This document shows positions 1,532 through 44,160 of a DNA stretch of 64,000 bases, in pieces. The stretch lies in the sequence record NC_048668.1; one strand, written 5' to 3'. Within the stretch, counting starts at the first letter, position 1. Each line of letters starts with the position of its first letter. The translations under genes were made by a program, and so were the position numbers. The notes under the pieces are model-generated. The model saw only the letters and a list, made by a program, of their open reading frames with translations. It was not told where the DNA came from and made no database searches.

Positions 1532-1945
1532 ATGCCAGTAAGCCGAAAACCTCGTAAGAAAACGAAGGCGGTGAAAGCTACATCTCGCCCCGAAGTAACC
1601 AGGGAAAAAGTCCTGGAACAAATCGAAGTAATCCGCCAGAAGCTGATTGAAATTTATCAACTTCTCGCTTATTACACCAAGCTGAAAGAAGCCGGGACCG
1701 TACCGGAAGACCAGCTGGAGTTATTCTCCGAAAAGATTCATACGATTGGCCAAGAGTTCAACACTTATGCGACCAGTCTGGCTAAGTTTAAGAAAGAAGT
1801 GGAAGCTTTGGAAATAGGCTCAGACTGCGACCACTTGCGCGAAGTACTTAGTGAGTACCTTGTCAGGATGTCAGCTTTCCTGGTGCCAATGGCAGAGTGT
1901 ACTGATATTATCCTTAAAGTAGAAGGAAAGAAAGATGTCAACTGA
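1532..1945 (+). CDS. Hypothetical protein (137 aa), basic N-terminus and helical/coiled-coil body
   Basis: AAGGA RBS; MPVSRKPRKKTKAVK; overlaps the next ATG. Confidence 0.8.
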   Translation: MPVSRKPRKKTKAVKATSRPEVTREKVLEQIEVIRQKLIEIYQLLAYYTKLKEAGTVPEDQLELFSEKIHTIGQEFNTYATSLAKFKKEVEALEIGSDCDHLREVLSEYLVRMSAFLVPMAECTDIILKVEGKKDVN

Positions 1946-3680
1946 TTTAACTCCAGGCATGGATGTAACCCCGCCTATCGACAACGAACAACCGGCAGCA
2001 GAACAAGTTATTGCTCCGGGAGTGGAAGTAGAAAAGAAGAACATCTTCGACGACTACGAAGTCGAAACTGATGAACTTCCACCAACTATGCAGGTTGAAC
2101 AACCAGCGCCGGTTGAGAAAGAAACTCCGGTAGAAATCCCGGAAGCAGATGTACCGGTAAAAGAACCGGAGCCTATTGAGGATCCTATCTATCCGGTAGA
2201 AGACGGTACCCTGAAGATTCAAGGTGACGTCTATAAACTGATCGACTCCAAAACCGGCGTGCAGTCCGGCATGGTATTGTTGAACACCACGCGTGAAGAC
2301 TTCAACAACAAAACCGAACGCATGAGCGAAGAAGAAAGTAACAACATGGAAATTCTTCCGTTCCTGCTGACTGGTACCAGTGCCCAAGACACCGCTTACC
2401 CAGGCGAAGGTCTGATCAAAGCTACAACTCGTATCGGTAGCCGCTGGCGTCAATACCTGACCCAGGCTAACGACTCAACGCAACTGGGCCCTCGTCGCCA
2501 TCGCTTTGCGCTGACTAAAGAACAAGGCGCAGTAGTAAGTGGCCACGGTGCAGTAGACCTCTTCATGGCAGGTACTAACCTGGGTCGCTCCGTACAGATC
2601 CCTCTGTGGCATTCTGGCTTCTGGGTAACTCTGCGCGCACCAACGGGTGCTTACCTGGCAGAGATCGACCGTGCTCTGGCTTTCTCCCGTGAAGAGATCG
2701 GCCTGGATACTAACGGTGCTGTTGGTTCTAACGATGCGTTGGTATTCGACGAAGTTCTGCTGGACTCCGCATTGAAGTTGGTAACCAGCTCTACTCTGCC
2801 ATTCTCCAAGAACCCATTGGAGCTGAAAGAGTTCATCGCTAAGAATGATATCCCGGTACTCATCTGGGGTATGGCGATGGCTGCATTCCCTGACGGTACT
2901 CCGATTGCAATTCCATGCGCCGAGTGCCACGATGTACAAACTGTTCATGCAAACCCGCTGCGCATGTTCTGGGTTGATGAGTCTCGCTTCACTGCGAAGC
3001 AACTGGCTCACATGGGCCGCACCAATAAAGTCCAAACGAAAGTTGAAGACTTGGTTAAGTACCATGAAGAGTTCGAAATCCTGAACACTGCTAACTGGGA
3101 ATACAACGGTCGTGTGTTCTACTTCAACGATCCGTCTGCAGATGAGTACCTGGTACGTGGCCGCGAGTGGATCAGTTCGATTAACCGCGCACTGTCAGAA
3201 TCTCTGCGTTCTCAATACGATGATGCTGAGCACCGTGCCGCAGCAGTTCAGTCGGCGCTGTCTACCGAAGACCTGTGCCGCTTTGCACATTACATCAAAG
3301 AGATCAAGGTTCCGTCCCAGGATCACGAAGGTGGTTACTACCTGATTCAGGACATGCCTACTATCATTGATGTCCTCCGTCAACTGGCCGCAGACGCGAA
3401 AGGTTCCATGGAACTGATGGTCGCTATCAACGACTTCGTCAATGACTCCATTGGCGCGTTGGTTGGGTTCCCTAACGTCGCTTGTCCAAGCTGTGGTAAA
3501 TACCACTTGAACAAGAAAGGAGAAAGCACGGTTATCGTTCCGTTTAACCCTGCCACTGGTTTTTTTACCCTTGCACAACACAGGATCCGCGTCTCGGGTG
3601 GAATACCACTGACAAACCTACAGACATTAGGAGTGAGCGCTTTGGTAACCAGGGTCTCGGAGAGCGGGCTGCCGGTATAA
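1935..3680 (+). CDS. Conserved jumbo-phage protein (581 aa) with two CxxC pairs; candidate tail assembly chaperone (G-like)
   Basis: CAEC and CPSC motifs; acidic Pro-rich N-terminus; GGT-TTT-TTT slippery site at 3558-3566. The function call is inference. Confidence 0.75.
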   Translation: MSTDLTPGMDVTPPIDNEQPAAEQVIAPGVEVEKKNIFDDYEVETDELPPTMQVEQPAPVEKETPVEIPEADVPVKEPEPIEDPIYPVEDGTLKIQGDVYKLIDSKTGVQSGMVLLNTTREDFNNKTERMSEEESNNMEILPFLLTGTSAQDTAYPGEGLIKATTRIGSRWRQYLTQANDSTQLGPRRHRFALTKEQGAVVSGHGAVDLFMAGTNLGRSVQIPLWHSGFWVTLRAPTGAYLAEIDRALAFSREEIGLDTNGAVGSNDALVFDEVLLDSALKLVTSSTLPFSKNPLELKEFIAKNDIPVLIWGMAMAAFPDGTPIAIPCAECHDVQTVHANPLRMFWVDESRFTAKQLAHMGRTNKVQTKVEDLVKYHEEFEILNTANWEYNGRVFYFNDPSADEYLVRGREWISSINRALSESLRSQYDDAEHRAAAVQSALSTEDLCRFAHYIKEIKVPSQDHEGGYYLIQDMPTIIDVLRQLAADAKGSMELMVAINDFVNDSIGALVGFPNVACPSCGKYHLNKKGESTVIVPFNPATGFFTLAQHRIRVSGGIPLTNLQTLGVSALVTRVSESGLPV

Positions 3681-3721
3681 TCGAAACCTACCACGGCCTA
3701 GGTAGTCTTCAGAGTAAGATA

Positions 3722-4051
3722 ATGTTACGGCGTGCGTACGATCTGGATAACGGGATTTATTCAGAAGCCTACGACAAAGCGACACCTTACTCTATTATTG
3801 AGATGAACCAAGTGGAGGCAGCAGCTAACAAAGGTAAGTTCGTAGAGCTACTGGAGTTCTTCCGTCTTCATGAAGTGGGTAAGGAGCTAAATATGTCCTT
3901 TACTGAATTCATCAATCTCGATAACGACATAATCGAAACCATTAAGTTATGTTGCACGCGTTGGCGTTCAGAGGATGATAGTGCCACCCGTGAAGCATTG
4001 CAGAAAAGTGGGATCGACCCTAGGACGGGTAACCCTATTAAACCCGCGTAG
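3722..4051 (+). CDS. Small conserved protein, probably the C-terminal (T-like) part of a -1 frameshift product; frame is open from 3548
   Basis: No stop in this frame from 3548 to 4049; weak RBS before ATG 3722; ELNMSFTEFINL...I helix is reminiscent of chaperone T/gp51-like segments. Confidence 0.65.
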   Translation: MLRRAYDLDNGIYSEAYDKATPYSIIEMNQVEAAANKGKFVELLEFFRLHEVGKELNMSFTEFINLDNDIIETIKLCCTRWRSEDDSATREALQKSGIDPRTGNPIKPA

Positions 4052-44099: not shown

Positions 44100-44133
44100 A
44101 ATAGAGTAGAGGCCAAATGGCCTCTACTCTGTG
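44100..44133. terminator. Bidirectional terminator hairpin
   Basis: ATAGAGTAGAGGCC-AAAT-GGCCTCTACTCTGT between convergent genes. Confidence 0.8.
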
Positions 44134-44160
44134 TCAGCTATTCAGCTTTTCTTTTTTTGC

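What the first reader, a model, noticed from the sequence alone, without database searches (positions are those of the whole stretch)
3548..4051. Candidate programmed -1 ribosomal frameshift giving a G/GT-type pair in a phiKZ-like phage
Seen: the 581-aa gene reads GGT TTT TTT ACC at 3558-3569, a T_TTT_TTT slippery heptamer, although Phe is usually TTC in this gene. The -1 frame is open without a stop from 3548 to 4049 and runs into the 109-aa ORF, whose own ATG has a poor RBS. The remaining 0-frame codons (about 37) switch to rare codons (AGG, GGA, ATA, CTA), as expected for dual coding. The predicted products are 581 aa and about 705 aa (...NPATGFF/YPCTTQDPR...GSLQSKIMLRRAY...). Established: a conserved -1 frameshift makes the G and GT tail assembly chaperones in lambda and many long-tailed phages. 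Inference: this CxxC-containing pair is the jumbo-phage chaperone G/GT equivalent, located away from the tape measure gene. I am not aware of this having been described for this phage group. The shift direction is opposite to all the +1 errors in this assembly.
Basis: partly seen in the sequence, partly recalled or inferred. Interest (0 to 1): 0.85.

Follow-up and report, generated by a model that had tools for sequence, protein, structure and literature searches.

The report
Conserved -1 frameshift in jumbo-phage chaperone gene
A core gene of phiKZ-like jumbo phages very probably makes two proteins, a 581-residue one and a longer one reached by a ribosome slipping back one base on a run of seven T, and the pair appears related to the T4 baseplate-hub assembly chaperones gp26 and gp51.

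Summary
The window is Serratia phage 2050HW (Moabitevirus). Gene 1935-3680 carries T_TTT_TTT at 3560-3566 in its own frame. The -1 frame is open from 3548 to 4051 and absorbs the annotated 109-aa ORF.

Comparative evidence for a programmed -1 frameshift is strong.
- In 88 distinct relatives (phiKZ gp077 family, all Chimalliviridae lineages sampled) the -1 frame is always open from a T-run to 114-177 codons past the 0-frame stop.
- 77 of the 88 have a perfect T_TTT_TTY heptamer.
- The first Phe codon is TTT in 83/83, although TTC predominates elsewhere in these genes.
- No conserved start codon exists for the downstream piece, and no fused one-ORF homologue was found.

Function is inferred from remote homology. 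The upstream protein resembles T4 gp26 and the -1 extension resembles the C-terminal domain of T4 gp51. T4-type phages encode the short and long forms as separate genes with a non-slippery Phe-Phe. Ten of eleven other T4-like loci show the same heptamer plus a -1 ORF.

No experiment supports it yet, and one possibly overlapping paper (Vladimirov et al. 2022) could not be read.

The parts
1935..3680 (+). Gene for the 0-frame product (581 aa; 2050HW_00005; phiKZ gp077 / PhiPA3 gp074 family). Residues 1-80 are predicted disordered. The folded body has two Cys-x-x-Cys pairs (C328/C331, C517/C520) and an invariant Phe543-Phe544. It is a remote T4 gp26-like protein.
   Evidence: ORF and translation. 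Family and phiKZ equivalents. Structure model with pLDDT 76 and pTM 0.75. Invariant columns. gp26 link.
3560..3566 (+). Slippery heptamer T_TTT_TTT, under the invariant Phe-Phe, in phase X_XXY_YYZ with the 0 frame.
   Evidence: Conserved as T_TTT_TTY in 77 of 88 distinct relatives. First Phe codon is TTT in 83/83 although TTC:TTT is 743:395 elsewhere in these genes. The preceding base is T in 77/83.
3566..4051 (+). Reading frame -1 from the last base of the heptamer to its stop (161 codons plus stop); this is the extension of the predicted long product. The first ~46 residues are a poorly conserved, predicted disordered linker. The rest is a conserved helical domain.
   Evidence: Open frame. 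tblastn matches from residue 1 in distant phages. Conservation profile. Structure model (pLDDT 59, residues 90-150 at 73-83). phrog_12109.
3567..3680 (+). Dual-coding zone. The 0 frame finishes a conserved helix (539-553) plus tail while the -1 frame encodes the linker.
   Evidence: 2050HW versus Totoro identity is 92% here against 82% upstream and 73% downstream. 0-frame residues after Phe-Phe are conserved across the family (Leu at +2 in 77/88, Arg/Lys at +6 in 74/88), whereas -1-frame residues are conserved only at +1/+2. Helix.
3722..4051 (+). Annotated 109-aa ORF (2050HW_00006). Read here as the C-terminal part of the -1 extension, with a gp51-C-terminal-like motif near its end, not as an independent gene.
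   Evidence: Its ATG is TTG in Totoro. Across relatives the first ATG in this frame ranges from -43 to +455 nt relative to the 0-frame stop, two loci have none, and an SD-like motif is absent in about half. hhalign to the small gp51-like ORFs gives P 0.004.

Best explanation
Gene 1935-3680 and the '109-aa ORF' form one recoded gene. Most ribosomes read the 0 frame and make the 581-aa protein. A fraction slip back one base when the two Phe-tRNAs sit on T_TTT_TTT (3560-3566). They then read 161 further codons in the -1 frame, giving a product of about 705 aa. That product has the same body, loses the last short helix, and gains a flexible linker and a small helical domain. The two isoforms are made at a ratio fixed by slip efficiency. 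By remote homology the body is a T4 gp26-type protein and the added domain is a T4 gp51 C-terminal-type domain. The pair is therefore most likely the jumbo-phage tail/baseplate-hub assembly chaperone: the short form coats or holds a hub or tape-measure-like partner, and the long form additionally recruits a second partner through its extra domain, as in lambda G/GT. Shown here: the signal, the frames and their conservation. Inferred: that slippage is ribosomal, the isoform ratio, the homology-based function and the partners.
For: Signal and frames in the window.

Conservation:
- The N-terminal part is found in 221 phage records of Chimalliviridae-type jumbo phages and in 1,734 protein clusters at 50% identity.
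- In 88 distinct loci the -1 frame is open across the junction in all, while the +1 control frames are short.
- The heptamer is T_TTT_TTT in 53, T_TTT_TTC in 24 and near-cognate in the rest.
- The T-run length varies from 5 to 9 while the frame relation stays constant.
- The first Phe codon is TTT in 83/83, against the TTC preference elsewhere.
- The base before the Phe-Phe is T in 93% of loci, while the base after the heptamer is T in only 12%. This asymmetry fits X_XXY_YYZ.

No independent start: and phiKZ-type KEN19 has no annotated downstream gene at all. -1-frame amino-acid similarity starts at the heptamer, and a residue conserved in at least 80% of sequences lies upstream of the annotated ATG.

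No fused one-ORF homologue: 31 hits of 352-614 aa; the best 150 of 1,734 clusters all end about 10-20 residues after the Phe-Phe.

Both products are meaningful, because the 0-frame tail is itself conserved.

Function:
- Foldseek hit to a model named 'Baseplate hub assembly protein, T4-like', E 1e-4, TM 0.56.
- Member P0025 hits phrog_150 (E 1.6e-4) and PF12322 (E 0.33) in the same region.
- hhalign of the family against the gp26 family gives P 1e-3 over 183 columns.
- Both families share a C-terminal CxxC followed by an invariant Phe-Phe.
- The extension against the small gp51-like ORFs gives P 0.004, and those ORFs match gp51 residues 200-245 at E 6e-6.

Natural control: T4-type phages have gp51 as a separate long gene whose N-terminus is gp26-like. 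They encode the gp26 Phe-Phe as TTC TTT with the -1 frame shut. Ten of eleven other T4-like loci have T_TTT_TTY and a -1 gp51-like ORF.
Against: - No direct evidence of the long protein exists: no mass-spectrometry, ribosome-profiling or gel data were available to me.
- No stimulatory RNA structure was found. The 124 nt after the site fold no better than shuffles (z +0.66). Across 88 loci the 70 nt downstream are no more structured than control windows (mean z -0.55 against -0.40, p 0.56).
- Eleven of 88 loci lack a perfect heptamer. Five of these have a single Phe codon, which would need P-site-only slippage.
- The homology to gp26 and gp51 rests on weak statistics. PF12322 is far below its curated cut-off (11 against 24.5 bits), and the extension against T4-type gp51 directly gives E 0.11.
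- The gene sits among transcription and replication genes, not tail genes.
- Its phiKZ-type homologue was listed among proteins detected early in infection (PMC11849849), which is not what is expected of a late tail chaperone.
- The model of the extension is of low confidence (pLDDT 59).
Confidence: 0.72

Rival explanations
1. Transcriptional slippage rather than ribosomal slippage. The phage or host RNA polymerase stutters on the T-run, so a fraction of mRNAs carry a changed number of U and encode the long protein in one frame. The products are the same but the step differs.
For: The site is a pure homopolymer of 7-9 T in 70 of 88 loci. No downstream RNA structure was detected. These phages use their own unusual RNA polymerases, whose slippage behaviour is unknown (my own knowledge).
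Against: Eighteen of 88 loci have only 5-6 T, and nine of the T4-like loci have 6 T; that is short for known polymerase slippage (established knowledge). The phase of the run relative to the 0 frame is conserved and asymmetric: T before the Phe-Phe in 93%, C allowed at the last heptamer position in 30%, T after it in only 12%. That pattern matters for tRNA re-pairing but not for a polymerase.
Confidence: 0.13
2. Two separate proteins as annotated. The downstream ORF is translated from its own start, or by termination-reinitiation, and the T-run is only the consequence of a conserved Phe-Phe.
For: Every database record annotates two genes. In several T4-like phages an ATG lies within a few bases of the gp26 stop. 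In 2050HW an ATG exists at 3722.
Against: The start is not conserved: TTG in Totoro, and the first ATG lies anywhere from -43 to +455 nt, or nowhere, in relatives. -1-frame conservation begins at the heptamer, up to 52 codons before the annotated ATG. A conserved Phe-Phe does not explain TTT in 83/83 nor the T before it. T4-type phages keep the Phe-Phe but spell it TTC TTT where no -1 ORF follows. The -1 frame is open across the overlap in 88/88 loci.
Confidence: 0.1
3. Artefact or decay: a homopolymer sequencing error or a pseudogene splitting what is really one ordinary ORF.
For: Homopolymers are error-prone in some sequencing chemistries.
Against: The arrangement is the same in eight independent Moabitevirus genomes, in 12 further cultured jumbo phages and in 80 metagenomic contigs. 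Run lengths differ but the frame offset is always the same. No fused homologue was seen in 31 + 150 listed proteins. The 0-frame tail after the site is conserved as protein.
Confidence: 0.02

Closest known systems
Lambda gpG / gpGT tail assembly chaperones (conserved -1 frameshift of long-tailed phages; Xu, Hendrix and Duda 2004, cited in PMC9024508)
   Same: There is a slippery heptamer near the 3' end of the first ORF. The short and long isoforms share the N-terminal body. The long form carries an extra C-terminal domain and has no start of its own. The proposed role is tail assembly.
   Different: No sequence or fold similarity was detected. The first product is 581 aa rather than about 140. 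The heptamer is T_TTT_TTT under an invariant Phe-Phe. The gene is not next to a tape-measure gene in this genome.
T4 gp26 and gp51 (hub assembly chaperones, PMC3004832 Table 2; apparently the tail assembly chaperones of T4-like phages in Vladimirov, Gautam and Davidson 2022, which I could not read)
   Same: The body of the window protein aligns with the gp26 family. It shares the C-terminal CxxC followed by Phe-Phe. The -1 extension carries the motif of the gp51 C-terminal domain. The short-plus-long logic is the same: T4-type gp51 is a gp26-like body plus the C-domain.
   Different: T4-type phages use two separate genes on opposite strands and a non-slippery Phe-Phe. The jumbo protein is 2.5 times larger, with about 270 extra N-terminal residues, and its extension has a linker of about 46 residues and a larger domain. 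Curated family thresholds are not reached.
gp26 plus small 'gp51' ORF of cyanophages, KVP40-like vibriophages, Aeromonas, Stenotrophomonas, Cronobacter and Pelagibacter T4-like phages
   Same: The architecture seen here is the same: gp26-type gene, T_TTT_TTY on the terminal Phe-Phe, and the gp51-like ORF in the -1 frame, open from before the heptamer. In three or four of them there is no Met near the start of the conserved peptide.
   Different: There the heptamer lies 1-2 codons before the 0-frame stop, the extension is only 50-62 codons, and an ATG often sits beside the stop, so reinitiation is a live alternative. These pairs lie next to hub or tape-measure-like genes.
T7 gene 10A/10B and E. 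coli dnaX tau/gamma (other bacterial-type -1 frameshifts)
   Same: Tandem slippage of two tRNAs on X_XXY_YYZ produces two isoforms with different C-termini (my own knowledge).
   Different: dnaX uses an upstream SD-like element and a downstream hairpin, and none was detected here. In dnaX the shifted form is the shorter one.

Membership tests
Programmed -1 ribosomal frameshift site (X_XXY_YYZ class) | Slippery heptamer in phase with the 0 frame | tested here: met
   T_TTT_TTT at 3560-3566. A perfect T_TTT_TTY heptamer is present in 77 of 88 relatives.
Programmed -1 ribosomal frameshift site (X_XXY_YYZ class) | The -1 frame is open from the site into a conserved coding extension that lacks its own conserved start | tested here: met
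   Open in 88/88 loci, against short +1 control frames. Start codons are not conserved. Amino-acid conservation begins at the site.
Programmed -1 ribosomal frameshift site (X_XXY_YYZ class) | Nucleotide conservation beyond what the protein requires | tested here: met
   First Phe codon is TTT in 83/83 against TTC:TTT of 743:395 elsewhere. Preceding base is T in 77/83 against 27% T at third codon positions elsewhere. T4-type control has TTC TTT.
Programmed -1 ribosomal frameshift site (X_XXY_YYZ class) | Stimulatory RNA structure a few bases downstream, or an upstream SD-like element | tested here: not met
   Fold z +0.66 in the window. Across 88 loci mean z is -0.55 against -0.40 in control windows, p 0.56. 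Pseudoknots and SD-like elements were not searched for systematically.
Programmed -1 ribosomal frameshift site (X_XXY_YYZ class) | Detection of the transframe protein | not testable with these tools
   No proteomic or ribosome-profiling data were at hand. No paper in the searched library describes it.
Lambda G/GT-type tail assembly chaperone family | Sequence or fold similarity to known tail assembly chaperones | tested here: not met
   No Pfam hit, no PDB hit. BFVD models named tail assembly chaperone appear only at E 0.6-1.2.
Lambda G/GT-type tail assembly chaperone family | Position immediately upstream of the tape-measure gene | tested here: not met
   The neighbours are RNA polymerase subunit, GNAT and RNase H-like/DNA polymerase genes. 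The nearest tail gene, a baseplate wedge gene, is about 7.5 kb away on the other strand.
Lambda G/GT-type tail assembly chaperone family | Short and long isoforms sharing an N-terminus through a -1 shift near the end of the first ORF | tested here: met
   The site lies at codons 543-544 of 581, and the extension is 161 codons.
T4 gp26 family (Pfam PF12322 T4_baseplate, phrog_150) | Score above the curated family threshold | tested here: not met
   The window protein has no hit. One of 30 members reaches 11 bits against a 24.5-bit cut-off, and phrog_150 at E 1.6e-4. A true member (DLP6) scores 187 bits.
T4 gp26 family (Pfam PF12322 T4_baseplate, phrog_150) | Profile-profile and fold similarity over most of the domain | tested here: inconclusive
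   hhalign gives P 1e-3 with probability 21% over 183 columns. Foldseek gives E 1e-4 and TM 0.56 to a gp26-type model. The two agree in region but are modest in strength.
T4 gp26 family (Pfam PF12322 T4_baseplate, phrog_150) | C-terminal Cys-x-x-Cys followed within about 13-25 residues by an invariant Phe-Phe at the end of the domain | tested here: met
   C517/C520 and F543/F544 are invariant or nearly so in the jumbo family. Phe-Phe is invariant and CPKCG is the consensus in the gp26 family.
T4 gp51 C-terminal domain (phrog_634) | Similarity of the -1 extension to the gp51 C-terminal domain | tested here: inconclusive
   hhalign to the small gp51-like ORFs gives P 0.004 over 38 columns. Directly to T4-type gp51 the same region aligns at E 0.11. 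The window piece does not hit phrog_634.

The most novel reading that the evidence does not exclude
The -1 frameshift joining a gp26-type body to a gp51-type C-terminal domain may be ancestral and nearly universal in Chimalliviridae and in most T4-like lineages other than the T-even group. T4's separate gp26 and gp51 genes would then be a derived, duplicated, frameshift-free solution. On this reading the frameshifted tail-assembly-chaperone principle of lambda extends to the largest contractile-tailed phages, through a gene family unrelated in sequence. Hundreds of jumbo-phage genomes would then carry an unannotated core protein of about 650-750 residues.
Probability: 0.5. Interest if true: 0.8.

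Novelty: new member of a known kind. Interest (0 to 1): 0.72.

Why it matters
If true, every nucleus-forming jumbo phage (phiKZ, PhiPA3, Goslar, SPN3US, PCH45 and others) encodes a core protein isoform that no genome record annotates. In some records, such as the phiKZ-type KEN19, the C-terminal domain is not annotated at all.

It would give these phages, whose tail and hub assembly factors are unknown, a candidate assembly chaperone pair with a built-in stoichiometry control.

It would link three solutions to the same problem: lambda G/GT, T4 gp26 and gp51 as separate genes, and the frameshifted gp26-51 type.

It would also give a clean natural comparison for studying U_UUU_UUY slippage without an obvious RNA stimulator.

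It further bears on genome annotation pipelines, which currently split the gene.

Tried and rejected
- Pfam, NCBIfam and PDB sequence searches with both pieces and with family profiles gave nothing usable.
- Foldseek of the 581-aa model against the PDB gave no hit with E below 1.
- The model of the -1 piece was of low confidence, and its fold search returned only unannotated jumbo-phage counterparts.
- A downstream stimulatory RNA structure was looked for in the window and in 88 relatives and not found.
- hhalign of the family profiles against single DLP6 sequences was uninformative; family alignments were needed.
- The large profile search listed only its best 150 hits, so it could not show the weak tail where gp26-type proteins might lie.
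- Ten literature searches found no description of this frameshift. 'gp77' in the Goslar, PCH45 and PhiPA3 papers refers to other genes.
- Considered and rejected: a group I intron or translational bypass to explain the hyperconserved 113 nt. The -1 frame is continuously open and conserved as protein from the heptamer on, so nothing needs to be skipped.
Full report
**Identity of the window.** Bases 1935-4051 are identical to Serratia phage vB_SmaM_2050HW (MF285618.1) at the same coordinates. They are 98.8-100% identical, over exactly 2117 bases in one piece, to seven other independently sequenced Moabitevirus genomes: BUCT660, ParM-25, Kodama, Yaphecito, Haymo and Moabite, plus the RefSeq copies. 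Totoro is 79% identical. All records annotate a 579-581-aa hypothetical protein followed by a 109-aa hypothetical protein.

**The observation.**
- Gene 1935-3680 (581 aa) reads GGT TTT TTT ACC at 3558-3569, so the seven T at 3560-3566 form T_TTT_TTT in phase with the gene.
- The -1 frame is open from 3548 to 4049 and contains the 109-aa ORF 3722-4051.
- Phe is TTC 17 times and TTT 5 times in the gene, with two of the TTT at the site.
- Upstream, the -1 frame has 36 stops in 538 codons and a longest open run of 47. The 167-codon run has a chance of about 1e-5 at that stop frequency.
- Runs of seven T or A are avoided in the window, 2 found against 16.2 expected. The other run is intergenic, beside a hairpin between convergent ORFs.

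**Conservation in close relatives.** Between 2050HW and Totoro, identity is 82% just upstream of the heptamer. It is 92% from the heptamer to the 0-frame stop and 73% beyond it. This is the pattern expected of a stretch read in two frames. The ATG of the 109-aa ORF is TTG in Totoro, which corresponds to a Met-to-Leu change inside the open -1 frame.

**Conservation in distant relatives.**
- A tblastn search with the -1 frame piece alone (3566-4048) matched phages with only 26-49% identity: KpLz-2_45, FBKp24, PCH45, SPLA10, PhiEaH1 and DT01. Except for DT01, whose match begins at query residue 14, the matches start at query residue 1, right at the heptamer, under two annotated genes.
- The N-terminal part is found in 221 phage records spanning phiKZ-like, PhiPA3, SPN3US-like, Goslar, Agricanvirus, Ralstonia, Vibrio, Xanthomonas and other jumbo phages.
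- According to the PhiPA3 record, the phiKZ equivalent is gp077, and PhiPA3 gp073 / 201phi2-1 gp135 is the downstream piece.
- I examined 12 phage-record loci and 80 IMG/VR contigs, 88 distinct sequences in all.
- In every one the -1 frame is open from a few codons before a T-run to 114-177 codons beyond the 0-frame stop, while +1 control frames are short.
- The run is T5 in 6 loci, T6 in 12, T7 in 44, T8 in 22 and T9 in 4, always with the same frame relation.
- The heptamer under the Phe-Phe is T_TTT_TTT in 53 loci, T_TTT_TTC in 24, G/C_TTT_TTY in 6, and a single-Phe variant in 5.
- The first Phe codon is TTT in 83 of 83, although Phe elsewhere in the same genes is TTC 743 to TTT 395. The base before it is T in 77 of 83, against 27% T at third positions elsewhere.
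- The Phe-Phe is one of only 18 invariant columns of the protein family.

**No independent start, no fused version.** In the -1 frame the first ATG lies anywhere from 43 nt before to 455 nt after the 0-frame stop. Two loci have none, and about half have no SD-like motif before any start. The phiKZ-type genome KEN19 annotates no downstream gene at all, yet has 165 open, conserved -1 codons. A residue conserved in at least 80% of the 88 sequences (position 26 of the window's -1 piece) lies before the annotated ATG. Among 31 homologues from the 5.8-billion-protein set, lengths are 352-614 aa. A profile search found 1,734 clusters, and the best 150 all end 10-20 residues after the Phe-Phe. None is a fused ORF of about 700 aa.

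**Both frames matter.**
- After the Phe-Phe the 0 frame is conserved as protein: Thr/Ile/Ser, then Leu in 77/88, and Arg/Lys at +6 in 74/88.
- In the model of the 581-aa product this stretch is part of a confident helix, 539-553 (pLDDT 76, pTM 0.75).
- The -1 frame is conserved at the first two codons (Tyr 56/88, Pro 63/88). It then becomes a variable Ser/Thr/Pro/Ala-rich stretch.
- That stretch is predicted disordered for about 46 residues, before a helical domain.
- The short product therefore ends with its own helix. The long one replaces that helix with a linker and an extra domain.

**Mechanism.** The signal is a canonical tandem-slippage heptamer for tRNA-Phe. I found no stimulatory structure. 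The 124 nt after the site fold no better than shuffles. In 88 loci the downstream 70 nt are no more structured than control windows. Transcriptional slippage is the main rival for the step itself. Two facts speak against it. Runs of only 5-6 T occur in 18 jumbo loci and in nine of the T4-like loci. The conservation is also phase-specific and asymmetric: T before the heptamer in 93% of loci, C tolerated at its last position in 30%, and T after it in 12%.

**What the protein is.**
- Sequence libraries and the PDB gave nothing.
- Foldseek against predicted viral structures returned jumbo-phage homologues. It also returned, at E 1e-4 and TM 0.56, a model named 'Baseplate hub assembly protein, bacteriophage T4-like'.
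- One family member hits phrog_150 'baseplate hub' (E 1.6e-4) and PF12322 T4_baseplate (E 0.33) in the same region.
- Using an accession given in PMC5349666, I fetched the T4-like phage DLP6. Its gp26-type protein is a clear PF12322 / phrog_150 member.
- An alignment of nine gp26-type proteins showed a C-terminal CPKCG motif followed by an invariant Phe-Phe at the very end. This is the same layout as C517/C520 and F543/F544 here.
- hhalign of the two family alignments gave P 1e-3 over 183 columns.

**The T4-like parallel.**
- In all nine T4-like phages the terminal Phe-Phe is spelled T_TTT_TTY 1-2 codons before the stop. The small ORF annotated gp51 or 'hub assembly catalyst' lies in the -1 frame, which is open from before the heptamer. 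The +1 frame is shut.
- Vibrio phage V07 is the same. Kuttervirus Se-J has Ile-Phe and a weaker site.
- These small ORFs match residues 200-245 of T4-type gp51 at E 6e-6.
- The jumbo -1 extension aligns to them at its C-terminal motif at P 0.004, and to the same part of gp51 at E 0.11.
- In T4-type phages (ime09, JK42) gp51 is a separate 249-aa gene on the other strand. Its first ~186 residues are gp26-like.
- There the gp26 Phe-Phe is spelled TTC TTT and the -1 frame is closed. This is a natural control.
- The T4 tail review lists gp26 and gp51 as hub assembly chaperones (PMC3004832).
- The PRFect paper summarises Vladimirov et al. 2022 as finding that some T4-like phages carry a short tail-assembly-chaperone gene and a longer fusion gene instead of frameshifting (PMC10885494). 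I could not read that paper.

**Context and counter-indications.**
- In this genome the gene lies between an RNA polymerase subunit operon and GNAT / RNase H-like genes, not beside a tape-measure gene.
- phiKZ gp77-79 and Goslar gp81/82 are not mentioned in the main text of the two virion-structure papers. That fits a non-structural assembly factor but proves nothing.
- The phiKZ-type homologue (Churi gp256) was listed among proteins detected early in infection (PMC11849849). This sits awkwardly with a late role, although that list also contains homologues of virion proteins.

**Verdict.** The candidate frameshift is real as a conserved genomic signal and is very probably used. The function as a tail or baseplate-hub assembly chaperone pair is a reasonable inference from remote homology. 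It is not a member of the lambda G/GT family, but it works by the same logic. No description was found in the searched literature. The unread 2022 paper may overlap for T4-like phages.

Noticed in passing
L097:10486-11369 (-), L098-L105, L109 (T4-like phages DLP6, HTVC008M, S-ShM2, S-PM2, Moby, Cronobacter S13, phi-ST2, phiAS5, Bakedbeans, V07): The gp26-type gene ends with an invariant Phe-Phe spelled T_TTT_TTY 1-2 codons before its stop. The small gp51-like ORF always lies in the -1 frame, which is open from before the heptamer. In S13, phiAS5 and Bakedbeans no Met lies near the start of the conserved peptide. This suggests the same recoding in many T4-like lineages.
   Followed up: partly
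L106:1268-1894 and 468-1217 (ime09), L107 (JK42): T4-type phages spell the gp26 Phe-Phe as TTC TTT, have the -1 frame shut, and carry gp51 as a separate 249-aa gene on the other strand. Its N-terminus is gp26-like and its last ~50 residues match the small -1 ORFs of other T4-like phages.
   Followed up: yes
window, whole; 44152-44158: Runs of seven T or A are strongly depleted: 2 in 64 kb on both strands against 16.2 +/- 4.8 in shuffles. The only other run sits in the spacer between convergent ORFs, next to an inverted repeat (about 44106-44127) that looks like a terminator.
   Followed up: partly
window 1532-1945 (+): A 137-aa ORF overlaps the start of the frameshift gene by 11 bases. A gene of similar size sits in the same place in every relative inspected (phiKZ gp078 / PhiPA3 gp075 position). 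It may belong to the same module; no family or function was found.
   Followed up: no
L014:2553-3101 (Simmy50 gp271); L010:2658-3152 (KEN19); L008:1-1495 (PhiEaH1): Annotation of the downstream piece is inconsistent between records. Simmy50 calls an ORF starting 135 nt inside the upstream gene. KEN19 calls nothing in the 165 open -1 codons and places small opposite-strand ORFs there. PhiEaH1 does not annotate the upstream gene at all.
   Followed up: no
L108:2080-2259 (Salmonella phage Se-J, Kuttervirus): The gp26-type gene ends Ile-Phe-Ile with only four T. A gp51-like peptide still follows in the -1 frame, open from three codons before the stop. This is either a weaker or different slip site, or independent initiation.
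   Followed up: no
L097:10050-10665 (-) (DLP6): The 60-aa gp51-like ORF is overlapped at its end by a 148-aa ORF in another frame that weakly matches membrane-protein families. The meaning is unknown.
   Followed up: no
literature: PMC11849849 Table 1: Churi gp256, the homologue of phiKZ gp077 / PhiPA3 gp074, is listed among proteins found by proteomics early in infection. That is unexpected for a tail assembly factor, unless it is carried in with the infecting virion or has an earlier role.
   Followed up: partly
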